Source: Bigelowiella natans CCMP2755 (taxonomy: Eukaryota > Protista > Cercozoa). Taken from it: 64,000 nucleotides of DNA. The stretch spans positions 63,624 to 127,623 of the forward strand of contig ADNK01002621.1 of NCBI GenBank assembly GCA_000320545.1, written 5' to 3'. The notes under the pieces were generated by a model. That model was not told where the DNA came from and made no database searches. It worked only from the letters and a program-made list of their open reading frames with translations. The position numbers and the translations under genes are program-made. Positions 8,840 to 57,281 of the stretch are shown here, in pieces (positions within the stretch are counted from its first letter, which is position 1; every line of letters starts with the position of its first letter).

Positions 8840-10039
8840 GCCCGAGCAAAAAACAATCTATCTTTCAATTCTTGTTACTTTGAAACTGCGAGATCGACTG
8901 TGCTAATATTTTTCGTCAAGCTTTAAGGGAAAACTGTGGATACTCGCTGGTTTCCTACTCGTTCCTCTTTAACCTTATGTTGTCGGAAACAAAACTAACG
9001 TGATTTTAAAGGTCGTAGAGGTTAGAATTACTTTCATTTTATCATTTCAATGAATCAAAAGTGATTTCGGATAGGGTTATTTTCAAGTGTCTGTGCCAAT
9101 GCTACTACTGTGGAAGAAGCGGGATAAATAGGCTGCGCCCATTCTGAACTAAACACCCGCAATATACATGTAGCCACATCTTTCACCAATAGATGTTACC
9201 ACAACACAAGGACGTACTTTCGATTGTTCTATCCCGTAGGTAACTATTGGTCCCAGAAAATGTTCAAACTGACGCAAGGGGGGGAGAAACCTGTGTGGTG
9301 TATTCAATGACGACAAGCTTTTAACCAAATATCGTGAGGAAGTGTAGGGGTTTTACGCATATTTTTTATTTGCAGGAGATAACAAGCGCAAAGCTTGTGG
9401 TTTGTCCTAGAATTGCAATTTCCTAGAATTTCACCCAAAATCAGCCAACTGTACAAATTCCAGCTCTAGAAATTGACAGGCGATTTTTCGGTAAAATTGG
9501 TTGCAAAGTGGTACCCCGTTAATCCTCCAGCAACAGCTGGTGTGAACTCCAATATCAGACCACAACTGCCCCGATTAAAATCAGTCCGTCACGTTTGTCG
9601 CAGCAGGTCAAATTAGTTTGTCTTCTTCTCTGATGTTGGCTATTACGAACCTTTTCTTGGAAAATGGCAAGCGTTACGTGAGATTTGGATGTCTTGCCGA
9701 ACTTTTATTTGTTGTTTTTGGATGTGCGACAAAATAAAAGTGACACCTCACCGAGACCTTACCTCTCTTCTTCCACACTATCGATCTGCCTGCCACCATC
9801 ATTCTTCGAGAGCTCGTCATTCACAAGTGGACGCATTGACGACACCGTGCTGTCCGTGTCAACGGTACGTAGTGCGAAGAAACGTGCTCTGTTTGCTTAC
9901 GTACATGGATGTACACACGAGATGTTACCACTTTGTCAACCAACAAAAGAGGAACGTACAAAAAGAGGCTACGAAAAACAATGACAACGGATGTGAGCTC
10001 ATGTCTTTACCAATTTTTTCCGATGCAGTGCATGGACTG

Positions 10040-13000
10040 ATGACAACCGGGCGTTACATCATCCTGCTTTGCTACTTCGCTACTCTCGCGATCTCGGTCA
10101 ATCATTCGAAGGACCCGAAAAGTGGCAATGAGGATGGTCCTCTTAACCCCAAAATTGCGATCGTTGGGGGTGGGATAGGTGGGTCGGCTGCAGCTGTATT
10201 CTTGCGATCCATCATTGGGGAAAAAATAGACATCACTCTTTATGAGAAAGAGGTATTATCAATGTAGTGTGGAGAGTTGCTCCTGGTGCTACCTCCAATA
10301 GATGTCCATCCTTCGGTCTTGTGGTTAGCTTTTGGAATCTGTGAAGGAATGAAGAGGAAGGAGCTGCCTTTGAAATGTTTGTTATGTTGTTTGATACCCA
10401 AATTTGTTTCCCCTAAAATGACATAGGACCACACATGTGGAAGGTTAGGATTACTTGAAGTAAATGGAAAGGTGATGTTGCTGGGTAGCGGAGAGTAAAC
10501 TCACGACTCTCTCTCTCTCTTTCTCTCTTCTCTCTTTCTCTCTCGTGCGCTTGTTAACATATCCACATAAATGAACAAACATGCATTCATAAATATTCTC
10601 AGTCAGCGGGTGTGTGTGCGGCGAGAGTACGAATGTATGGGTGTACGTACATTTAAAGTTGTTTGAATCCATCTTTTGCAATTAAATATAGTACTACAAC
10701 ACTGGCGGCTGTGTCGTGCACCCGAGAAACATGTAATACTGTCAGTGTAGCTAATCCTTCTGATTCTTAGCATCATTAACTATCCTGATGTAATTTGTGT
10801 TCGAATACGCTGTGTTACACCAAATGTAATTGGGGGACATCCAAATTCGTGTAAATGATATTGTACGAGCATTCTGTGCACCAACACTGTGATAAGCAGT
10901 GATATTTCTATCACGGAAGAAAGAAAGGGGGGAAGGGGGAAATTCATAACCAAAAAAATAACAATAATTTACTATTTAAAGGCACATGCAAAACCTTACC
11001 AAGCTAGCAGGGTTTCACCATGACGAAGATGGTAGTATGTAACTTTTTGACTGCTAATATCATCATTTATAACAACTCTCTGTACCATTCATGACGGTGG
11101 TCGTTGCTAACATTATGACTTGTCTCATCATCAGCTCATTCCTTGCTCATTTATATTTTTCCATACGAATTACAGGCGATGGCAAGATGTATTTCTATGA
11201 TCCTGCCTCGAAGACATTTCCTCTCAAGCAGACTGGGTAGAGGATTAATAGTGGTAGCAGTTACCATAGCAGAATTATCAATGAGAATCACCCGGAAAAG
11301 CTGAAGGACTCTTCATATAGCACAATAATTGCTTCTCGTTTTTTGTTCATTCCTTTGTAGATTTGATATACTTGATACAATGCTGGTCCTTTGGAGGTAC
11401 GGTCTTGGCCCTCTCCGTCTCAATGTAGTATTTTCAGACGCAAGATAATGATTATGAATGGAGACCAAGAATATTTGATTGATGCTATCATACTAAAGTT
11501 GTCCTTGTTCGCAGTGGGCAGTTGAAGCAATGCTTAAAGACTTTGACAATATCTACAAACTACAGGTATTATTATTACGATAGAGATCATATCGTGATGA
11601 TGCATGCTTATGTGTTGAAAAGTGATGGTGGTTGGAGCAGCAGCTAGCACCGAGTAGGATAACACTAGTCAATGTTTATTATTTCTTCCAGTAGCTAGTT
11701 CTACATGGCTTTCAACTACCACTTTCTAATAAGTTTACAACTACTACTGCTACTACTACCAGCATAATAATTATATGTACATAAAAACTCGGTTATATGA
11801 ATTACACCTCGGTTAATCCGCCCGATGAAATATAATTCGTAATACTGTACGACATGAATTGGATAATTTCATGCTTCAATCCCTTATTATTTACACGTAG
11901 GAGCAAGGAAGGGCATTCGATACAGTCGAAGAAATGTTGCATGCAATGGGTGACAACCATAAATCTTCTATTCAAAAATTATGGCTACTATCAAAGCACT
12001 CAAACCGCATCATTACGCACACATATAAACACACACACTCACTCACTCACGTGTATATGTGAGTATGCATGCAGGATTTAATGACTTCTATCTTTCGTGT
12101 GAATCATAACGATTTTAGACTTAATCATCGTTCATCGTATAGCTGTCATCAAACTCGATATTGTTGGCCAAAGTATGACTAAATTGTATTCAATGGACCC
12201 ATCATCTGGTTATCATCTTAGGGGGTGAAGAATTCGTCAGGATGCTCAAAATTCCTCTTAGGGACTATTTAGAAGAACGGGTAGTTGTTGCAGTAGAAGC
12301 ATTCGTGCTCCTACAACAAGTAGTAGTTCACATGAGCTCCTTCCCTTCTGTCAAAAACCTGCTCACAAACCCTGATCATCATATTGCCATCATTTTCTCA
12401 TTACGTGCGTAATAATAGGCGTTAAAAGATCCTTTGATCTCCGAATTTGCTGGAGTTGCCATGGCTGTCAATTATGGCCAAAATATACAAGTAGCCGTAA
12501 ATTAGCGTCATAAAAAGAAGATCAATTGAACGCATTTGCTGCTACAATTAAAGAGCAATGGCCGCTAAATACGCTAGCTAGACTGCTGCGGCGGTGAGGG
12601 TCGAATAACCTCCATCAATTGATCACAGTGGTTTTATCAATAGCTCTATCCAACTTTACCCCCTATTCTGTCTGCCTATGCTATTGTTCTACGTTGTTAC
12701 AATAAAAAGGACATGCAAGCCTTCGTGGGAATGGTGTCAATGGCAGGCATTCAGCCTGGACTTTGGAGGATTAAAGAAGGTGGTGATTACGATAAACATG
12801 TAGAATTTGAAGCCAAGGTGTAGAACGATAACAAACACCAACAACATGCCATAATGCTCAAGGCTGTAATGATGCACAGATGTCCTAATCTGTTCGTTTT
12901 TCCATTCTCGTTCTTTTCGCGTGGTAGCATCTGCAATTATCTCTTTGCTTGCTTGCCTTTTCGGCACTGACAACATGTACAACAACAACAACAACATTAT

Positions 13001-13726
13001 ACACCTTCCCTATCCTGCTGTCACGTCTCGTCGTCTTCTTGAAGGAAACGGTGCCATTTGCGACCGTTTGCTGTCCCATGCAAAGGCAGATGTGCGGTTA
13101 TCCACACCGGTGACTACCATCACGAGGATAGCCTCACCATCGACGTCAGCAGGGGAGCAACCGATGATGACAAAGTATTCGATAAAAACTGGGGAAAGGG
13201 AGGAAGAGGAAGAAATTTATGATGGATTAATTGTAGCAGCACCATTACAACTAGCGAAGATTCAGCTAATCAACTTTCCATCTCTCGAGGAACAGGGTGA
13301 TTATGATGAGGGTCACTACCATAGAACTGTTGCAACATTTGTTACCTCCAATATGGTCGATCCGACATTCTTCCAACAACATGATGGATTCGATCCAAAG
13401 AACCCTCCGGATATCCTAGCAATAAAGCCTGGTGACCAATTCTCAAGCATAGACACACAAGACCCAGCTTCTTATCCGGGTAGTAGCAGCACCACCAGTA
13501 GTAAGGAAGAGGAGCAAGAAGAGGAGTTTCACGTGCATAAGGTGTTTTCGAACATGCCTTTGGAGGACGATACTATCAATCGGCTGTTTGGTAAAGATCA
13601 TCATGGGCGGCAAGTTCATCCCGTCGAGTAAGCAAATAATGGATTCAAACCAGATATGACATGATGATAACACATGAGTGTTGGTAATCATACATATCTC
13701 TCCCCTCTCTCTCTTTCCCATTGTGG

Positions 13727-48578: not shown

Positions 48579-49439
48579 ACTATATACTATATATATATGA
48601 TATTACATGTCTATTATGCTGTGTGCCATGCAGCCGCGCTGTACACATACAAATATAATGAATGGACACATGTCATCGCATTCTGCTTTCAAAGGTCATC
48701 CTAATGCACGTAGCTAAGTAGCTGCATACATGTACATGTATATACATATATGTGAGACAGTTGTAATGAAAGATTTAAATACATATATGTATATATATAT
48801 ATATATATATATGCACATCTAGCTAGCTAGACATGCAAATATGCGATGACTGACACATTGCTGTGAAAAACTCTACACGGCATCTGCACGACTAACAAAT
48901 CAAGCTAAGTTGTAAGTGCTGCACATTTGTTTTAATTCAGCATATAAGCATGCCTTTTTCGCACCTACGTACGACGTAGTATAATTAGTGCACTATTGCA
49001 TGTATAGCCCATGCGAGCGATCGATTAATATCGCATGCAGTGTCAGCCTATCAGGCTGTGCATGTCTTAGCTTCATACACATACGTGTAAAGCTTGCGTG
49101 CATGCACAACGCTACATGCAATGGCAACAGGACGTTCGGCTCACATGCAAAAGCACGGCGCTACGAGGTGGTACATCGTCACTTAGCGCAGAGACACAGC
49201 AGTAGACATACATGAGCGATCTAATCCTATGTAGAAAGCCCAGGCGATAGAGGGTGGTGGAGGCATATATATCGTATGGCGATAGGTGCGGATTTATATT
49301 ATTTCCGCTCATCATGCAATGAGGTTATGATTTCCATGTACACATAGTTAGTAGAGAGTGATAGGCGATGCAAACGTAGGACATCGCACAGGATTATTTC
49401 ACAAGAACGAACAAAGCTGTATGACTACCACATTGTCTG

Positions 49440-49879
49440 TCAGTTTTCCACCACTTCACCATGGATCTCGAGGCTCTCCTTCACCTGAAAGTAAAAATAG
49501 TGATGATTTATCGGGATGATGCCAACGATGAATAAGCAGAAAAAGTAAAGCAAAACAGGGATAATTAATTACCGGGTATCCAAACTCCTTCTCCTTCCTT
49601 TTCTTCGTCTTCGCTTTCGCATTGGCTTTATTATTTTCATGTTTGTCCATACACATTACATTAGAACAAACCATCATAACTCACAAATGCTGCTGCAGCA
49701 ATTCCATACAGCCCTTCTTCTCTTCCTCCTCCCTCCCCTTAATTACAACGTGTGGGTTGAGCTTACATAATCGATTTTGGTCCGAATCCAGGGAATATTG
49801 CATTCATAATCTCAGACTTTAGCATTGGTACTTTCGGCAGGTGCTTGTGGATCACATCTTCAGTGTTCTGTATCATCAT

Positions 49880-49910
<31 letters not shown>

Positions 49911-50037
49911 AGCAGGAGCAGCAACAGCAGCCACACCATCAGATTATTTTTGAAGTTTTCGAGAATGAGAATAATATTTAAAACAGTAATTATAAGAAGG
50001 AAGGAAGAAGAAGAAACTATATTATCACCACCACTTG

Positions 50038-50072
<35 letters not shown>

Positions 50073-52056
50073 GTAGTACCTTGAGTCTAATGCGATCTTC
50101 CAGCCGTAGTTCTTCAAAGGACTTATCAGCCTTTACGTACCTGAACAACGAATGGAGGAGGAAGACTATATCATGTCGTTGTAGTCGTATAAATTATTAT
50201 TATTGTAATGACAACTGCCATAAAGTATACTATTACATTTCCATTTTCCCTATCGTATGTGCAATCCATGTGCGGTGTCTGTGGAAGCTCTTTGTGTCTT
50301 CAAATGTACACGTCTTAAATGGATAGCGGAAAGTCCCCACCTGCATGATATGCACACATACGTCGTCGTGGTTTGCATATTAGACTGTGGTATGTGTATG
50401 CTACTGCAAAGTGTGTGTCATATGTGCGTGTGTTTGTTATCGTGGGTGAGTGAGTGAGTGAGTGGGTTATGAAGTTTGGCGGGGAGGGAGGAACCATTCT
50501 GATGTTGTGATGTCATGTGCTGCTTGAAGTAAATATAATTCATTATAATGCTGCATCATCATCATCATCATCATCGTTTAAAGCTTATCCTCTCAATTCG
50601 TACCACATCAGATTCTTCTTCTTCTTCATCATCCTGCTCTACTTTCTCTCCCCCCTCCTCTTCTGCAGCAGCTTGATGTCGTTGTTGACCTTCTTCCCCT
50701 CCTCGAAAGCAGGGGAATGGTGAGGAGAAGGGAGGGGAGGAGTAGGAACTATGCTGTCGGTAGTGAGCCACCTCTTCCTGCAAATTTAGGATACGACGTA
50801 TCATATAACGCAGCGCCTTGAGGTCCTCCGTGTCCTCCAGCTGCTGCTGCTGCTCTGTTTGACATATTGATGATGATGAAAGTGTTGTTCCTCGTTGTGA
50901 TGATAATGGTATTAATGATGAAGACAACCCACTTTCTGACGATAAGGAGGTTGCTGCTGCTGCTGATGCTGCTTCTCCTGTAGCTGCGGGCATACCATGC
51001 TCGGTAGTAGCACACGTAACAACAGTCCTACCATCCCCATCATCATCAACCTTTTCAGCATTATCATCATCATCCTCCTCCTCCTCCTCTTTCTTCTTCT
51101 CTTCGTTGGCCATGTATATCATTTTCTTAGCAGCAAAGCTACTTTCGTAGAGCTCCATGGCAATCTCTACATCACCAGGACCTCCTCGAGTTTCATGTGC
51201 GGTAGCAAGTTTATTCTCAATCTTTGCCACTTCAGGATGGTACTTCACGTCAGTCGATAGATACATCTCTTTTATCAGCACTAAGCTGCTTTCATAGAGC
51301 TCGATTGCCTTGTCAAGATCAGGTGTTCTCCCTCCTCCTCCTCCTCCTCCTCCTTCTTCTTCTATTCTTCCACGAGCCATCAGCATATCAGCAAGTTTGC
51401 TTTGACTGATCGCCACATTCGCTTTGTTTTTCAGATTCACTTTTCTTGTTTCTGCTAATCTGCATTCTAAGAGCTTAATTGCGGAGTCAAAATGAGATGA
51501 ATGCCCTTGCTGCATCATACTTTTATTCCCAGTAGTCTTTCCATCCTCCCCTTTTTCGTCTAATTCGTTATTTTCTACCGTTAAAATTGTGTTATTTGTA
51601 CAGCAATATTAGATGTTGTACGAATATTGATGATGGTAGCAATAAAACAGTGATGGAAGCTAAGAAAAACGATGAGATATGCCTGTGATGGCACTGATGA
51701 TGGTAGTAAGTAATGATAATAAGAAAATAAAAGTTATGATGATGATGATGAAGAAGAAGAAGAAGATATAAAGCGACGTGACCGTTAAGTGATGCAGGTT
51801 CGCCCTTGAGTGTTGTTGTTGTTGCTGTTGGCGCTGCCACCGAAGCCTCCTTCAAGTTTTCTGTTGTTGAAGACTTTATATCATTCTCATTCTCATCTCC
51901 TGGGACGCTGCTGGTGCTTCTCTCCTCTTGTTGCCTTCGTAGGGTGTTGTTGTTGTTGTATCCAAGGACATGGAAGTAGCTTCTTTCTGGGTAACGCTCC
52001 TTTGCATGCTTTACTAGATACTGTTAAGCCCCAAAACACATATTATTAATAACACT

Positions 52057-52140
<84 letters not shown>

Positions 52141-53800
52141 TAAAGCCTACCCCAGCCCTCCACACCCTATCTCTAATCTCAGCATTATTACCTCCTCCAC
52201 TCTTTCAAGAGGCAAAATTTCAATTTCATCGTTTGATCTCATACTGAGCTGATAAAAAAATAGCATTTCGATGTCTTAGAGGTTTGCTTCACCGAACAAA
52301 ATCGTTAAACATAATGTATATTCTACTGTTCCAGCTACTTTTACCACTTACCCCACCACGATCTACGACGAAATAGTAGCAGTTGTATACTTAGTCTCCA
52401 CCAACCAACCTGCTTTGCTGTGTTGTCTCGATATAGTAGTATGCCGTTATACACAAACCGAACAGGTCCTGTCAACACCTGCTCAATAAAACAACAACAA
52501 GAACAAGAATGATAATTTGCCATTCATTGAAATGCCGATATCACGGCCATTATCATCTTTTTGGTTAAAACAACTAATTACCATGTTATAGTAGGCCTTC
52601 ATCAACATTCCGAGGGGTTTATTCTCAAGAGTACTAAAGCGGAGTGGAATGCCGTCTTTACGGTAAGTTACCAAGTCGATACGCTCTCCTTCAACACCCG
52701 GAAGCAGCTCGATAGGTCTAATAACACCATTACCTTCTTCTTCTTCTCGACCCAAAGCACTTCTACTTTCCAGACACCGACTTAAAGGATATTCCGTATC
52801 GTCTTGCCGGAGAGGAGGTGGAGAGCCATCACTAAACCTTGGATGGTATGTGCTATTGCCTGTACTAATAGACATTTCACCAATGGAACTATCATTCGTT
52901 CTGCTACCACCAAATCCAAATCCTCCATTGAATGCAGAAGTAGGGGTATGAGTAGTAGCAGCACTATGTTCTCTCGTACCATCACCACCACCATCATCAA
53001 AAGTATTATGTGAGTTTGAAGAGGGGAAGGAAGATTCCAACGCACGACCACCATCGCCACTGCTGCTCTCACCACCATTTTGTTTCGAATCGGTGGCAGC
53101 AAATAACCCATCAGTTGTTCGAATGCTCTCCTCCCCATTTTCCGACAATGTCGGTGGTGATAACTTAGGTGCTGATGTTGATGGTGATCGTGTTAATGCA
53201 GACGATGATGCTTCTAAAGAGGAACAACTAGCACCGTTAGCACCGTTAGCACCGCTCCTTCTTCTTCTTCTTGTACTAATTCTGCTACTGCTTTTGGGAG
53301 CAGCAGCACCAGCAGTACCGTGCCCTACTCTTACCAGATTATTGAAACTATCGTTTCCAATGTTGCGAAACTGCGGGGGACTTTCAGCTCTGGAATTACC
53401 GAATCCAAATGCAGAAAAAGTTCTAGTAGCATCAGCGCCCAACTCCCCCCCCCCAAAAGCCCCAATACCAAAACCATCCCCACCGCCAAGGCCATGCTGC
53501 TGCATTGACAAACCAGAGTCCTCACCGCCAAGCCCGCCACCGCTAGAACCACCAAAGATAGATCCTAAGGATCCAAATGCTCCATTTTCTGCTGGAATGT
53601 TATTTTTCGCCTCTTCTTTTCCCTCACCAGTGGATGATGTTTCCCCAAGTTCTTGTTTTGTGTTCCCAGCTTCTTGTTTTGTTTCTGAGAACCAACTCGC
53701 CTCATTGTCACTTAGATGATGTTCATGTGAATCATCCTTCAATTCTTCCCTTTGATCTCTCATCGCTTCTCCTTCTCCTTGTCTAATTAAATTGTTCCTG
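49440..53800 (-). CDS. Large multi-domain protein: FG-rich region + SUMO-like domain + kinesin-light-chain-type TPRs + Nup98-like GLEBS motif (both ends uncertain)
   Basis: FG-rich: GAFGSLGSIFGG, GFGIGAFGG, SAFGFG, GGFGFGG. SUMO-like: RIDLVTYRKDGIPLRFSTLENKPLGMLMKAY..VRFVYNGILL..LSMRSNDEIEIL. TPR: AIELYESSL..HPEVAKIENKLA. GLEBS-like: TIGKMEMYVKADKSFEELRLED. Confidence 0.65.
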
Positions 53801-54433
53801 TAGATGCGAACAGCGTGTGTGTGTGTGTATGGTTGTGTGTGTGTGTGTTTGTGTGATTGTGCTGGCAAGATAACAATCATTATCACCGTCATCGTCATCA
53901 TGTCATCATCATATTTGTTGTTTCTTTGGCATTAATGGATCGTGTGCTGTACAAGTAGTGGTAACACGATTTCTGTACTTTTCCTCCTCCTCCATGTTGC
54001 CAAAGGTGGTGGTGGCTACAATAGATTGATTGTGACTTTCTTGCAACAAAGAAGAGTCCCATTCTTAACTACGACAACTAAAATGTTGCTTTTTATCCAA
54101 TTTTCACATGCCTTTCCAGGAATAACATTCGGGGAAGGATCCCGGAGCCGCATTCCAGATGAAACCCGCTTACTGCTAACTCCAAGCTATATCAATTTTT
54201 CTGCATGTCGGTGTTGCTAAATAGTCGGCCTTTTCTGATCCTGAAATCTCGGCTGCATTCTTTGAAGAAAGAAAATGCAGGCCATATTTATGGAAAATAT
54301 GGTAAAAAACGCAGAGTAAGAGGAGCAAGTGCCATGCCTCTCTCTCCACAAAGTAGTGCCGATGATGATTCCGATACTCTTGCCTACCAGGGGAAGTAAG
54401 TAGAGTGTAGAAGAGAGCCGTTCTCAAGCAACA

Positions 54434-57281
54434 ATGGATTCATTTGCTCGTGAAACACCTACCGATACTGACCGGGTTGTTGATTGGGTGGTAAGGACAA
54501 GGCAGGAAAAACAACACTCGACTGCTGTCTACTGTGGGGAGGAGGGATTAGTTGGTCTTAATAACTCCTCTTTTCCACTTGCGACGAATCGTCCTAAGTC
54601 AGCTTTTGAGCACTTCTCTGAGAGCCTGTGTGATGAATCTCGTCTTCAAAAAGTATTCACACCTTTGGATATAAAGGAAGTGATCGCTGTTCCTTCTTGG
54701 GGAAGGCTAAGTTTAAGTCAGAAACAAAAGTAGTAAATGGTTAATCGATCGGATGGTGTAGAGTAGCATTGACTTTTCAATGTAACATTTCATAGATATA
54801 TAGAACTTGCGGAGCTGGATCGAGACCGTTGGAAATATGTGAGTCCCACCATTCAAATCAGATTAGTTGATTGGTATAAATCATCCTGAGTAGTTCAAAG
54901 AACAACTCGACAACCCTTCTTAGGTGTTGACTTCATAATTAGGAAACATGGTTGTTGACTGGTAGTGTGGATGATTATAAATATTCAATCTATAACACTA
55001 GATTGGGTGGTGAGAAGAATTCAATCAATTTTGGGGGACTTCGCGGAATGCAGCAAAAGCATTGTGACATTGATGATGATGATGATCGTCACTGCAATAA
55101 GTTGGATAATGATGGCGGAACCAATGACATGAAGACATTAAAGAATCAACTCAAAAATCGATTTGCTCGGTTCAGACCAGTAGATGCTCTATATGTGACA
55201 GTCGGCGGTGCTGGAAAATTTGATCCTTTCGCACAAACCCACAGTATGCTAAATTTTGATGACAAGGAGTCAACAAGAAGGCTGAATCTTGCGAATACCA
55301 AGCTGGTGGAACTCTTACAAAAGGGTAGCACTCACAAACAGAATAGCCATCGTAGAGGTGCTACTGATACACAACTTCACTCGTCTGATGTTGGAATTCA
55401 CAAGAAGAAACATCAATACCTTTCCAAGTCTCTACCACTGCTGCAGGTAGAATTCCCTTTAAGCAGCAGCAGCTCTATGGAAGATGGATTGTTTTCAAGC
55501 GGTGGCTCTAAAAGAGGACTTGGTGTAAAAGACAGTAGTAGCAGTGGATATCACCGGAACAACCACGTATCTATACTTGGAAGTGAATTCCAAAATTACA
55601 ATGACAAGAATAAACTCGAAGATATTATGACATCGATCACAACATATTCAAACGTAGGCACCGAGATTGGCAGCTTACCTCACGTAGAGACCAGAAATCC
55701 TACGAATTTGACAGAACTTGATGATGAAAGAGACGTACTTATTGATTCTGCACTCTCTTCTTCATCACATCACGAGGATATCAAGAGTAAGAGTGATGAT
55801 GAATGTGGAGAAGGGGCAGAATTTTCAATTGAGAGAAGTGAATCAAACCCTGAAGGAAATCTACCTGATCTGAACCACATGCCGATTTCTATAACTGAGA
55901 GAAGTGTTCAAGATCCTCATTTTGGTAATAATTGCATCATTGCTGAGACTGGTGAAGCTGATCAACAACCACAGAGATGCAATGAAACATCATGGACTAT
56001 GGAAACCTCCCTGTCAAATTATCGTAAAAAGGAAATGCAGGTTTATATCCCGAAAGAAAAATTGAAAGCAGGATCGAGAGTGAGGGTGTTTTGGGCGACA
56101 AGAGGTATGGATAGGACTGGTACAGGTCTTAATTACACATACCAACCCTCTTCAGTCATCATTTCACTCATTGAATATTCGTGTTGCAGTTCGCGAAATT
56201 CTAGACAAAAGTGATGGGAAGGGTACAAATGTTGGCGTGGAATATGATGATGGAGAGGTAATATTTCGAACCATTGTTTTGGTATTTTGTCCCTAAGATA
56301 CATACTTTACACAGTGGGTGGATCACATGTCAATAGAGGATTGGCCACACACGATTTTGAGCTTGCCAAATGATGATATCGAAGCAGCAAGCTTGAATCA
56401 TCATCATGTGGCACACAGCGACTCTGAGAATAATGGTAAATTTTTAGGGAAAAACTGTGATTCATCCGAGCGATAATACGATTTCAATCCCTTTTTTAGA
56501 AGGACCTGATATTAAAAGAGATTCCGACCAACTTGATAGAACTCAAGAAAATGATGAGCAAGAAACGGAGGAGTCGACTTCTTCTCTACGGGAATATGAT
56601 GTCGACTACAATGAGAGCAGCTATAGGCAGCAGAGTTACTACATTGATCCACACTCCTTAAACAACAATATTCACACCGATGAGGATGATGACATGCTGG
56701 TTAGTAATAGTAAAAGAGGATCTGAGGAATTCAAATCTAAATTTCACATTGATAGACCGAAGTCGCTCTTTGTTGGGAAAAACAGTATTTCTGAAATGGC
56801 ATTGATAGTTACGCCAACACACAATCTCATGGATTTCTCACCCTGTACCCACGGTACTCCGCATACCGTCGTCGATGGAAAGACAAATTCTTTAGGTAGG
56901 ATAGTTCCAAAACCTTTGAAAGATGCTCAAATTATGTTGGAGCATGTAAAGCAACGAAGCCCATTTCAAATGGAACGTGAAAGTTATTGCAGGCGCAAAA
57001 GTTACACCACGAAGAAAAGCAAAGTTTCATCGGCCATGAGTCAACGCCCAAAGAGTCAAGGAAGGTAGTACAGATAGCAATTCACTTTTCAAAATCTAAA
57101 AAATTCACGGTTTGATCATTTTTCACATGAGTTTGCCATTTCTACGGTTTGTCTGTTTCGCAGAGAGCCAGATGAAATTTCAAGCCCAATCCATAAACCA
57201 ATTCATTTGCGCTTGAAGCGACATCGAAAACAGCAGGTTCCTACTGTTTCTCCCAACACAAAGGTTGAATCCGGCACATGA
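54434..57281 (+). CDS. HMG-box and Tudor-like domain chromatin protein (start uncertain, ~54333-54434)
   Basis: HMG box: RPKSAFEHF..WGRLSLSQKQK|YIELAELDRDRW. Tudor-like: LKAGSRVRVFWA..VGVEYDDGEW. Long acidic/Ser-rich linkers. TGA at 57279-57281. Confidence 0.7.

What the first reader, a model, noticed from the sequence alone, without database searches (positions are those of the whole stretch)
49440..53800. Nucleoporin-like mosaic protein: FG repeats + internal SUMO-like domain + TPRs + Nup98-type GLEBS motif
Seen: manual splicing gives four modules in order. (a) A Gly/Ser-rich region with FG dipeptides (~53600-52900). (b) A domain over three exons (52690-52192), RIDLVTYRKDGIPLRFSTLENKPLGMLMKAYYNM|VLTGPVRFVYNGILLYRDNTAKQ|LSMRSNDEIEIL, with no diglycine. 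(c) TPR-like repeats (~51500-51110). (d) Exons 50340-50237 and 50140-50080, which join in frame to VGTFRYPFKTCTFEDTKS..TIGKMEMYVKADKSFEELRLED. Established: SUMO/Rad60-SLD domains follow the pattern I.L.V...DG..V.F.IK...L.KLM.AY....FLFDG..L....T...L.M.DGDEI. The Nup98/Nup116 Rae1(Gle2)-binding GLEBS motif ends in ITAMKEYESKSLEELRLEDY and is preceded by GT..KF. Inference: this is not canonical Nup98, since no autoprotease or Nup96 region is visible. It may be a Rae1-binding adaptor linking mRNA export or the nuclear pore to SUMO-pathway enzymes and a TPR cargo. I do not know this architecture from any characterised protein.
Basis: partly seen in the sequence, partly recalled or inferred. Interest (0 to 1): 0.8.

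Follow-up and report, generated by a model that had tools for sequence, protein, structure and literature searches.

The report
SUMO-like/TPR scaffold gene of Bigelowiella
This is a real, single-transcript gene of the alga Bigelowiella natans. It encodes a lineage-restricted scaffold protein with a built-in SUMO-like domain, TPR repeats and a highly conserved tail that only weakly resembles the Rae1-binding motif of nucleoporin Nup98, so it is an intriguing orphan rather than a demonstrated nuclear-pore protein.

Summary
The window is Bigelowiella natans nuclear DNA (a chlorarachniophyte, not human). The gene is JGI model Bigna1 90578. An intron-free transcript contig (L001) aligns to 53955-49255 in nine blocks with GT-AG introns.

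- **SUMO-like domain: confirmed.** About 140 PDB chains match, essentially all SUMO. The best single-domain E-value is 7.8e-5 over the whole beta-grasp. No diglycine follows.
- **TPR repeats: confirmed**, through relatives that are TPR_12 proteins.
- **FG repeats: only 8 FG dipeptides.** There is no GLFG and no Pfam FG-nucleoporin hit.
- **GLEBS: below threshold.** Nup98_GLEBS scores 12.8-17.4 bits against a cut-off of 27, and only its second half matches. It is nevertheless the top Pfam hit in both species, and the EE pair is present. No solved GLEBS chain was recovered.
- **Canonical Nup98 and Rae1 exist separately** in this lineage (PMC6411479).
- **The only orthologue found**, an MMETSP transcript, has just the TPR plus C-terminal half.

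Best reading: a lineage-specific adaptor. Docking to Rae1 or Bub3 is plausible (about 0.3) but unproven.

The parts
49255..53955 (-). Span of the spliced mRNA. Nine blocks: 53955-52582, 52478-52410, 52248-52192, 52020-51783, 51559-50604, 50340-50237, 50140-50080, 49867-49573, 49484-49255.
   Evidence: blastn of transcript contig L001 against the window, 99.7-100% identity. Intron ends are GT..AG (with the sequence used to resolve overlaps).
53761..53763 (-). Start codon as called on the transcript (MRDQREEL...). An in-frame ATG further upstream (53901-53899) and two short uORFs also lie inside the transcript, so the true start is uncertain.
52729..53763 (-). About 345 aa Gly/Ser-rich low-complexity N-terminal region. 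It has two FG patches (53577-53398 with 6 FG; 52920-52909 with FGFG) and an RRRRR basic patch (P0001 residues 165-169).
   Evidence: FG count against shuffles. No Pfam family, including the FG-nucleoporin models.
52213..52698 (-). Integral SUMO-like beta-grasp domain (P0001 residues 356-429). It is split over exons 1-3 by introns 52581-52479 and 52409-52249. No Gly-Gly follows it.
   Evidence: phmmer against PDB: 140 chains at E<=1, essentially all SUMO2/3, SMT3 or SUMO1. Best single domain is 2mp2_A, E=7.8e-5, aligned over SUMO3 residues 1-76. The exon-1 piece alone already hits SUMO2/3 in register. Pfam Rad60-SLD scores 19.4-20.6 bits, E=4e-4 to 9e-4, just under the gathering score of 23.8.
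51783..52020 (-). Exon 4: a 79-aa linker (YLVKHAKERYPERSYFHVLGY..., then low complexity). It joins the SUMO-like half to the TPR half in frame.
   Evidence: The exon 4/5 junction is also seen in the independent MMETSP transcript product P0003.
51111..51494 (-). Three TPR_12-like helical repeats (P0001 residues 538-665), with recurring A(I/M)(E/K)L(Y/L)E(S/C) motifs.
   Evidence: Pfam TPR_12 E=0.008, 16.8 bits, below the 30.1 cut-off. The exhaustive HMMER search finds about 50 multi-repeat proteins that match this stretch several times, with E down to 1e-30. Those checked are TPR_12 proteins. Identity to the orthologue is 60-70%.
50760..50822 (-). Conserved helix-like segment LKALRYMIRRILNLQEEVAHY (P0001 residues 762-782), inside an otherwise divergent acidic/Ser-rich linker.
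   Evidence: Alignment A1. About 80% identity in this stretch, against 13-47% in the flanking linker.
49767..50340 (-). Highly conserved C-terminal module (P0001 residues 835-923), in exons 50340-50237, 50140-50080 and 49867-49767.
   Evidence: 79% identity, with 76 of 96 columns invariant, between B. natans and the related species. No relatives elsewhere by word search. No PDB sequence relatives.
50095..50244 (-). GLEBS-like core MEMYVKADKSFEELRLED (P0001 residues 867-884). It is split by intron 50236-50141. The coding parts are 50244-50237 and 50140-50095.
   Evidence: Pfam PF21240 Nup98_GLEBS: E=0.0046 on exon 7 alone, E=0.005 and 17.3 bits on a 57-aa piece, and E=0.071 and 13.6 bits in the orthologue. 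All are below the gathering score of 27, and only profile positions 20-38 of 39 match.
49456..49625 (-). Alternative 3' coding exons (49625-49573 and 49484-49456) that encode the conserved tail IQCESEDEEKEGEGVWIPGEGEPRDPW, with stop TGA at 49458-49456. They are used when intron 49766-49626 is spliced. When that intron is retained, the protein ends ...KSIM at TAA 49765-49763.
   Evidence: JGI model P0054 against transcript product P0001. The same pair of isoforms exists in the related species (P0055 and P0002).

Best explanation
The locus is one nuclear gene of Bigelowiella natans (JGI Bigna1 90578). It encodes a 923-971 aa modular scaffold restricted to this lineage.

**Shown**
- One spliced mRNA carries, in order: a disordered Gly/Ser-rich region with a few FG dipeptides; a single non-conjugatable SUMO-like beta-grasp domain; a linker; three TPR_12-type repeats; an acidic linker with one conserved helix; and a very conserved C-terminal module of about 90-125 aa.

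**Inferred**
- The protein works as an adaptor.
- The TPR repeats and the C-terminal module are the core functional unit. They are what the orthologue keeps, and they are the most conserved parts.
- The SUMO-like domain acts as a built-in SUMO mimic that recruits a SUMO-recognising partner (a SIM-containing protein or a SUMO-pathway enzyme), as in Rad60/Esc2/NIP45.
- The C-terminal module is a docking site. Its most specific candidate partner is a Rae1/Bub3-type WD40 propeller, bound through the GLEBS-like core M..Y.....KSFEELRLED with its EE pair.

I rate the adaptor reading at about 0.5 and the Rae1/Bub3-docking step at about 0.3. The protein is not a Nup98 family member, and there is no positive evidence that it sits in the nuclear pore.
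For: - **One transcript:** L001 is intron-free, has a 923-codon ORF, and aligns in nine blocks with GT-AG junctions. The JGI model P0054 agrees.
- **SUMO-like domain:**
- **TPR:**
- **Conservation profile:** TPR 60-70%, conserved helix 80%, C-terminal module 80-100%, against 13-47% for the linkers.
- **GLEBS-like core:** Nup98_GLEBS is the top Pfam hit for the module in both species. The matched half corresponds to the part of NUP98 (residues 181-224) that is sufficient for RAE1 binding (PMC2133102). The EE pair that is invariant in all GLEBS motifs is present (PMC9147866).
- **Candidate partners exist:** chlorarachniophytes carry duplicated Rae1 and Nup98 (PMC6411479).
- **SLD mechanism:** SUMO-like domains are known to recruit Ubc9 and SUMO machinery (PMC7849368, PMC11065178; abstracts as listed).
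Against: - All Nup98_GLEBS scores (12.8-17.4 bits) lie below the gathering score of 27, and the first half of the profile is unmatched. The full-length orthologue P0002 and its 127-aa C-terminal piece give no hit at all.
- phmmer and hmmsearch of the module against PDB sequences recover no Nup98, Bub1 or Mad3 GLEBS chain, even at E<=10.
- The whole C-terminal module is nearly invariant between the two species, so conservation does not single out the GLEBS-like core.
- The AlphaFold2 models were low-confidence (pLDDT 51 and 54) and add nothing.
- In the SUMO-like domain the acidic residue of SUMO's FDG/FEG turn, which I recall as important for Ubc9 backside binding, is Asn here (FVYNG in the alignment). 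Several basic residues of SUMO2's beta2/alpha1 SIM groove are also replaced. The SUMO-mimic step is therefore uncertain.
- The N-terminal half has no detectable orthologue.
Confidence: 0.5

Rival explanations
1. The C-terminal module is a lineage-specific domain or interaction surface unrelated to GLEBS. SFEELRLED is then a chance resemblance inside a charged helical segment, and the protein has nothing to do with Rae1, Bub3 or the pore.
For: - Pfam scores are sub-threshold, and only half of a 39-position profile matches.
- No PDB GLEBS chain is recovered.
- The hit vanishes for the orthologue unless a 57-aa piece is cut out.
- AlphaFold2 suggests, at low confidence, a beta-hairpin plus several helices, that is, possibly a small fold of its own.
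Against: - Nup98_GLEBS is still the best Pfam hit among 24,736 models in both species.
- The EE pair and the M..Y...KS.EELR.ED pattern fall in the minimal Rae1-binding part of the motif (PMC2133102, PMC9147866).
Confidence: 0.55
2. The long ORF is a recent fusion or read-through of two units: an N-terminal FG/SUMO-like gene and a TPR plus C-terminal gene. The functional product of the second unit would be a protein of about 430-460 aa, as in the related species.
For: - The only orthologues found (P0002 at 434 aa and P0055 at 460 aa; MMETSP, ORF type 'complete') begin with M-DEKG exactly at the exon-5 boundary and lack the N-terminal half.
- The N-terminal half has no detectable relative in the 283-901 aa size range.
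- B. natans has in-frame Met codons near the start of exon 5 (MMQQGH).
Against: - In B. natans, exons 3, 4 and 5 are joined by canonical introns in frame on a transcript contig.
- The JGI EST-extended model agrees.
- The product of an independent MMETSP transcript carries the exon 4/5 junction.
- 515 stop-free codons across four exons are not expected by chance (inference).
- A fusion would still make the mosaic real in B. natans.
Confidence: 0.2
3. It is a genuine, divergent FG-nucleoporin or pore-associated protein that anchors Rae1 at the pore.
For: - FG dipeptides are enriched over shuffles (8 against 2.8), with two FGFG.
- There is a GLEBS-like core.
Against: - There are only 8 FG dipeptides in two short patches, and no GLFG.
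- There is no Pfam Nucleoporin_FG hit, no autoproteolytic domain and no other nucleoporin domain.
- The GLEBS-like core lies about 580 residues from the nearest FG patch rather than embedded in FG repeats.
- Chlorarachniophytes already have host-type and nucleomorph-type Nup98 (PMC6411479). That survey did not, as far as the held text shows, list this protein.
Confidence: 0.1
4. It is a divergent Bub1/BubR1/Mad3 ('MadBub') checkpoint protein. That family also has a TPR domain followed by a GLEBS motif, which binds Bub3.
For: The order TPR then GLEBS-like motif is the same as in that family (established knowledge; PMC9147866 for the GLEBS of BUB1/BUBR1).
Against: - There is no Pfam hit to Mad3_BUB1_I or Mad3_BUB1_II, even at E<=10.
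- The repeats are of the TPR_12 type.
- There is no KEN box.
- There is no kinase domain.
Confidence: 0.05

Closest known systems
SUMO2/3 and the SUMO-like domains of the Rad60/Esc2/NIP45 (RENi) family
   Same: A SUMO-homologous beta-grasp domain, about 31% identical to SUMO3 over the whole fold and including the PL..LMKAY helix. It lacks the C-terminal Gly-Gly, so it cannot be conjugated and is a built-in part of a larger protein, as in RENi proteins.
   Different: RENi proteins have two tandem SLDs at the C-terminus. Here there is one, internal and split over three exons. Pfam Rad60-SLD is just below threshold. The acidic residue of the FDG/FEG turn is Asn here. No TPR or GLEBS-like parts are known to me in RENi proteins.
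Nup98/Nup116 GLEBS motif (Rae1/Gle2-binding sequence)
   Same: The core KSFEELRLED with the invariant EE pair, preceded by M..Y. It matches profile positions 20-38 of 39 of PF21240. This corresponds to the minimal RAE1-binding part of NUP98, residues 181-224 (PMC2133102).
   Different: All scores are below the gathering score. The first half of the motif is not matched. The motif lies near the C-terminus rather than embedded in GLFG repeats. There is no autoproteolytic domain. By my recollection Tyr follows LED in Nup98; here it is Arg.
BuGZ/ZNF207
   Same: A non-nucleoporin, non-checkpoint-kinase protein that combines a long low-complexity region with a GLEBS motif used to bind and stabilise a Rae1/Bub3-type propeller (PMC9147866, PMC4602037). 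This is the closest functional analogy if the GLEBS reading holds.
   Different: BuGZ has N-terminal C2H2 zinc fingers and no SUMO-like or TPR domains. No sequence relationship was detected here.
Bub1/BubR1/Mad3
   Same: A TPR domain followed by a GLEBS motif.
   Different: No Mad3_BUB1_I or Mad3_BUB1_II profile hit, no KEN box, no kinase domain, and the repeats are TPR_12-type.
TPR_12 (kinesin-light-chain-type) repeat proteins of protists, e.g. TIR/AAA_16-TPR_12 proteins
   Same: The three helical repeats match these proteins' repeats many times over, with E down to 1e-30.
   Different: Those proteins have 5-13 matching stretches plus TIR/NTPase modules. Here there are only three repeats in a different context.

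Membership tests
Nup98/Nup116 nucleoporins | Extended GLFG/FG repeat domain | tested here: not met
   8 FG dipeptides in 330 residues, no GLFG. No Pfam FG-nucleoporin family at E<=10.
Nup98/Nup116 nucleoporins | C-terminal autoproteolytic (Nucleoporin2/APD) domain | tested here: not met
   No such Pfam hit on P0001 at E<=10. The C-terminus is instead a lineage-specific module.
Nup98/Nup116 nucleoporins | GLEBS motif reaching the Pfam PF21240 gathering score (27 bits) | tested here: not met
   12.8-17.4 bits, profile positions 20-38 of 39 only.
GLEBS-motif proteins (Rae1/Bub3 binders: Nup98, Bub1, BubR1/Mad3, BuGZ) | Invariant Glu-Glu pair in a motif of about 40 aa | tested here: met
   FEELRLED is read directly and is invariant in the orthologue. 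The EE pair is described as completely conserved in PMC9147866.
GLEBS-motif proteins (Rae1/Bub3 binders: Nup98, Bub1, BubR1/Mad3, BuGZ) | Statistically significant similarity over the whole motif | tested here: inconclusive
   It is the top Pfam hit in both species, but E=0.005-0.13 and below threshold. No PDB GLEBS chain is found.
GLEBS-motif proteins (Rae1/Bub3 binders: Nup98, Bub1, BubR1/Mad3, BuGZ) | Physical binding to the top face of a Rae1/Bub3 propeller | not testable with these tools
   No multimer prediction or experiment is available. The single-chain AlphaFold2 model of the module has pLDDT 51.
SUMO-like domain (Rad60-SLD, PF11976) | SUMO-homologous beta-grasp domain | tested here: met
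   phmmer against PDB gives 140 hits, essentially all SUMO, with full-domain alignment at E=7.8e-5 (single domain) and 5.8e-10 (tandem SUMO2). Pfam scores 19.4-20.6 bits against a gathering score of 23.8, so the curated Pfam cut-off itself is narrowly missed.
SUMO-like domain (Rad60-SLD, PF11976) | No C-terminal Gly-Gly, so the domain is integral rather than a conjugatable modifier | tested here: met
   The sequence after the last strand is EILPLERVEEYLVKH. The ORF continues for about 490 more residues.
RENi family (Rad60/Esc2/NIP45) | Two tandem SLDs at the C-terminus | tested here: not met
   There is one SLD only, at residues 356-429 of 923.
RENi family (Rad60/Esc2/NIP45) | SLD binds Ubc9 or the SUMO machinery | not testable with these tools
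   Needs a binding assay or a complex prediction.
Bub1/BubR1/Mad3 | Mad3_BUB1_I TPR domain, KEN box and Mad3_BUB1_II GLEBS | tested here: not met
   No Pfam hits at E<=10. No KEN.
TPR_12 repeat proteins | Repeats matching the TPR_12 profile | tested here: inconclusive
   The direct Pfam score is 16.8 bits, below 30.1. The closest relatives by exhaustive HMMER are bona fide TPR_12 proteins that match the stretch repeatedly. This is transitive support.

The most novel reading that the evidence does not exclude
A chlorarachniophyte-specific adaptor that docks a Rae1/Bub3-type propeller through a stand-alone C-terminal GLEBS motif and carries its own SUMO mimic and TPR platform. It could be tied to the unusual duplication of Rae1 and Nup98 into host-type and nucleomorph-type copies in these algae. 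If the upstream in-frame AUG is used, the hydrophobic N-terminus it adds might even route the protein towards the endosymbiont compartment.
Probability: 0.12. Interest if true: 0.7.

Novelty: new variant of a known kind. Interest (0 to 1): 0.4.

Why it matters
If the C-terminal motif really binds Rae1 or Bub3, this would be a fourth kind of GLEBS carrier, after Nup98, the Bub1/BubR1 family and BuGZ. It would be the first to couple that docking site to a SUMO-like domain.

It would also sit in a lineage where Rae1 and Nup98 are the only pore-related proteins retained for the nucleomorph, and where their function there is an open question (PMC6411479).

If the motif does not bind, the gene is still a clean example of a lineage-restricted mosaic. 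It shows an integral SUMO-like domain outside the Rad60/Esc2/NIP45 family, and probably a recent fusion of two units.

Tried and rejected
1. **Exon-by-exon Pfam**. The exon-1 piece of the SUMO-like domain gave nothing, because the domain is cut in three. The PDB phmmer search on the same piece did show SUMO2/3.
2. **PDB sequence searches with exons 2, 3, 6 and 7 alone**. Nothing meaningful was found.
3. **Word-index searches.** The C-terminal module in a long context and a short context found only itself. The N-terminal half found nothing.
4. **Two scans of metagenome contigs**. No relatives were found. The first scan used uninformative patterns.
5. **The look-up of encoding contigs for the orthologue products P0002 and P0055**. 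They are not on record, so their 5' ends could not be inspected.
6. **AlphaFold2.** The C-terminal module (4-row alignment, pLDDT 51) and the SUMO-like domain (single sequence, pLDDT 54) were both too uncertain. Foldseek on the latter gave only noise. The other model was not searched.
7. **Profile of the C-terminal module against the PDB**. No hits.
8. **MadBub hypothesis (TPR plus GLEBS).** Rejected: no family profiles and no KEN box.
9. **Supplement of PMC6411479.** It holds no protein identifiers.
10. **Direct alignment to a Nup98 GLEBS sequence.** Not done, because no tool gave me such a sequence and I did not type one from memory.


Full report
**Source and rules**

The window is eukaryotic, with short GT..AG introns, many microsatellites and about 42% G+C. 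It is Bigelowiella natans nuclear DNA. An exhaustive HMMER search with exon 5 returned a 923-aa protein, P0001, at 99% identity. Its 90%-identity cluster mate P0054 (971 aa) carries the name jgi/Bigna1/90578 estExt_fgenesh1_pg.C_730097, EukProt Bigelowiella_natans P017264. The contig is therefore not human, and that operator clause does not apply.

The joined window model was never handed to any search or fold. Whole-protein tests used the independent database records P0001 and P0054 by id.

One disclosure: the script concatenated the nine window blocks in memory, only to count their length against L001. The mismatch count it produced was uninformative, and I do not use it.

**Observation**

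All quoted peptides are present at the stated places on the minus strand.

The splice model is verified by a transcript. P0001 is encoded on a 3384-nt JGI contig (L001, sample 3300017095) as one uninterrupted ORF. L001 aligns to the window at 99.7-100% identity in nine blocks:
- 53955-52582
- 52478-52410
- 52248-52192
- 52020-51783
- 51559-50604
- 50340-50237
- 50140-50080
- 49867-49573
- 49484-49255

All eight gaps are GT..AG introns of 88-263 nt once the blast overlaps are resolved. One mRNA therefore spans all four modules.

- The transcript uses an exon-5 acceptor 15 nt downstream of the one in the JGI model (...SLN|DEKG against ...SLN|ENNELDEKG).
- The last coding intron (49766-49626) is retained in L001, giving ...KSIM-stop. 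It is spliced in the JGI model, giving the tail IQCESEDEEKEGEGVWIPGEGEPRDPW-stop at 49458-49456.

**Module by module**

(a) **N-terminal region.** This is a low-complexity region of about 345 residues, rich in Gly and Ser. It has 8 FG dipeptides in residues 1-330, against 2.8 +/- 1.5 in shuffles (p about 0.003). Six lie in residues 63-122 and two at 282-285. There is no GLFG and no Pfam family. It is FG-flavoured, but it is not an FG-repeat domain by any profile.

(b) **SUMO-like domain: solid.**
- The last 60 residues of exon 1 alone give 28 weak PDB hits, 27 of them SUMO2/3-type chains in the correct register.
- P0001 residues 350-450 give 140 PDB chains at E<=1, essentially all SUMO2/3, SMT3 or SUMO1. 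These include 4bkg (tandem SUMO2, E=5.8e-10) and 2mp2_A (SUMO3, E=7.8e-5, aligned over SUMO3 residues 1-76, about 31% identity).
- Pfam Rad60-SLD scores 19.4-20.6 bits (E=4e-4 to 9e-4), just below the gathering score of 23.8.
- The domain ends ...DEIEILPLERVEE and has no Gly-Gly.

(c) **TPR.** Pfam TPR_12 is sub-threshold on this protein (16.8 bits). However, the exhaustive search found about 50 proteins that match residues 81-157 of exon 5 repeatedly, with E down to 1e-30. Those inspected are TIR/AAA_16-TPR_12 proteins, with TPR_12 E-values down to 1e-111.

(d) **C-terminal module.**
- Pfam Nup98_GLEBS is the top hit for exon 7 alone (E=0.0046). It is also the top hit for a 57-aa piece of P0054 (E=0.005, 17.3 bits) and for the same piece of the orthologue (E=0.071, 13.6 bits).
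- It is always below the gathering score of 27 and covers only profile positions 20-38 of 39.
- The full-length orthologue and its 127-aa C-terminal piece give no hit.
- No PDB chain, Nup98/Bub1/Mad3 GLEBS peptides included, is found with exon 6, exon 7, the module or its profile.
- In favour: the matched half corresponds to NUP98 181-224, which is sufficient for RAE1 binding (PMC2133102). The EE pair, completely conserved among the GLEBS motifs of NUP98, Mad3, Bub1, BUBR1 and BuGZ, is present (PMC9147866).
- From memory only, and therefore a lead and not a test: the spacing from the upstream GT(F/I)(R/K)(Y/F) to the EE pair also resembles human NUP98.

I rate a functional propeller-docking motif at about 0.3.

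**Relatives and evolution**

The only specific relatives in 1.84 billion representatives are P0001, the messy MMETSP product P0003, and P0002. P0003 carries the exon 4/5 junction. P0002 (434 aa) and its isoform P0055 (460 aa) are MMETSP transcript products from an unidentified related species.

These two cover only the exon-5-to-end part. They start M-DEKG exactly at the exon-5 boundary and are labelled 'type:complete'.

| Region | Identity, B. natans vs the related species |
|---|---|
| TPR | 60-70% |
| Acidic/Ser linkers | 13-47% |
| Helix LKALRYMIRRILNLQEEVAHY | about 80% |
| C-terminal module | 80-100% |
| Tail | 93-100% |

Searches give the underlying alignments.

The N-terminal half has no detectable relative. 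That search sees only proteins of 283-901 aa that share short words with the query, so absence is weakly supported.

The TPR plus C-terminal unit therefore looks like the older core. The FG/SUMO-like half looks like a B. natans (or Bigelowiella) addition, or else the relative's transcripts represent a short isoform.

**Context**

[quoted passage not shown] One copy is host-related and one is nucleomorph (green-alga) related, the latter often with signal peptides. It also means candidate propeller partners are present in duplicate.

**Conclusion**

- The mosaic is real and lies on one mRNA.
- The SUMO-like and TPR modules are real.
- The protein fails every defining test for Nup98 membership.
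- The 'nucleoporin-like' and 'Rae1-binding' labels rest on a sub-threshold motif match plus a handful of FG dipeptides.

The best reading is a lineage-restricted adaptor. Its conserved business end is the TPR plus C-terminal module, it has a built-in SUMO mimic, and Rae1/Bub3 docking is a specific, testable but unproven step.

The structure predictions were too uncertain to help.

Noticed in passing
window 49456-49867 (- strand): There are two 3' isoforms. Retention of intron 49766-49626 ends the protein at ...KSIM-stop. Splicing it adds a 28-aa acidic, Trp-containing tail (IQCESEDEEKEGEGVWIPGEGEPRDPW). Both isoforms, with the same KSIM ending and a 26/28-identical tail, also occur in the related species (P0002 and P0055). 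The alternative splicing therefore looks conserved.
   Followed up: partly
window 53763-53955 (- strand); L001 1-195: The transcript's 5' region holds two short uORFs and an in-frame ATG at 53901. That ATG would add 46 residues starting MMTMTVIMIVILPAQSHK..., a hydrophobic, signal-peptide-like start that runs through a (CA)n microsatellite. The JGI model instead splices in a further upstream exon (MEEEEK). The true N-terminus, and hence any targeting signal, is unresolved.
   Followed up: partly
window 51559-51574 (- strand): Exon 5 has two acceptors 15 nt apart. The JGI model uses 51574 (adding ENNEL) and the transcript contig uses 51559.
   Followed up: yes
window 49255-53955 against L001: Six nucleotide differences separate the window and the transcript contig. 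Five of them change an amino acid (S65T, P274S, E605V, D758N, P798S in P0001 numbering). This is probably strain or allele variation, or possibly assembly error. The non-synonymous share is high, but the numbers are small.
   Followed up: partly
window 9689-10267 and 12921-13631 (+ strand): These are two ORF pieces of an FAD-dependent prenylcysteine lyase/oxidase-like gene. One has an NAD_binding_8 N-terminus. The other matches Prenylcys_lyase at E=7e-22. They are separated by about 2.6 kb, so the gene has at least one long intron or further exons.
   Followed up: no
window 17441-18043 (+ strand): An ORF with a PIN_6 ribonuclease domain (E=1.5e-8).
   Followed up: no
window 52061-52135, 53815-53861, 49872-49931, 50038-50071: Perfect or near-perfect microsatellites sit inside this gene's introns and 5' region: (AC)16 next to (AG)21 in intron 3, (GT)20 in the 5' region, and (ATC)9, (CAG)11 and (TAC)11 in intron 7. 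There are also coding triplet repeats that give the Gly8 run at 51331-51354.
   Followed up: no
window 54952-56214 (+ strand): A divergently oriented 420-aa ORF lies immediately upstream of the gene. It has no Pfam family and is Ser-rich and low-complexity.
   Followed up: no
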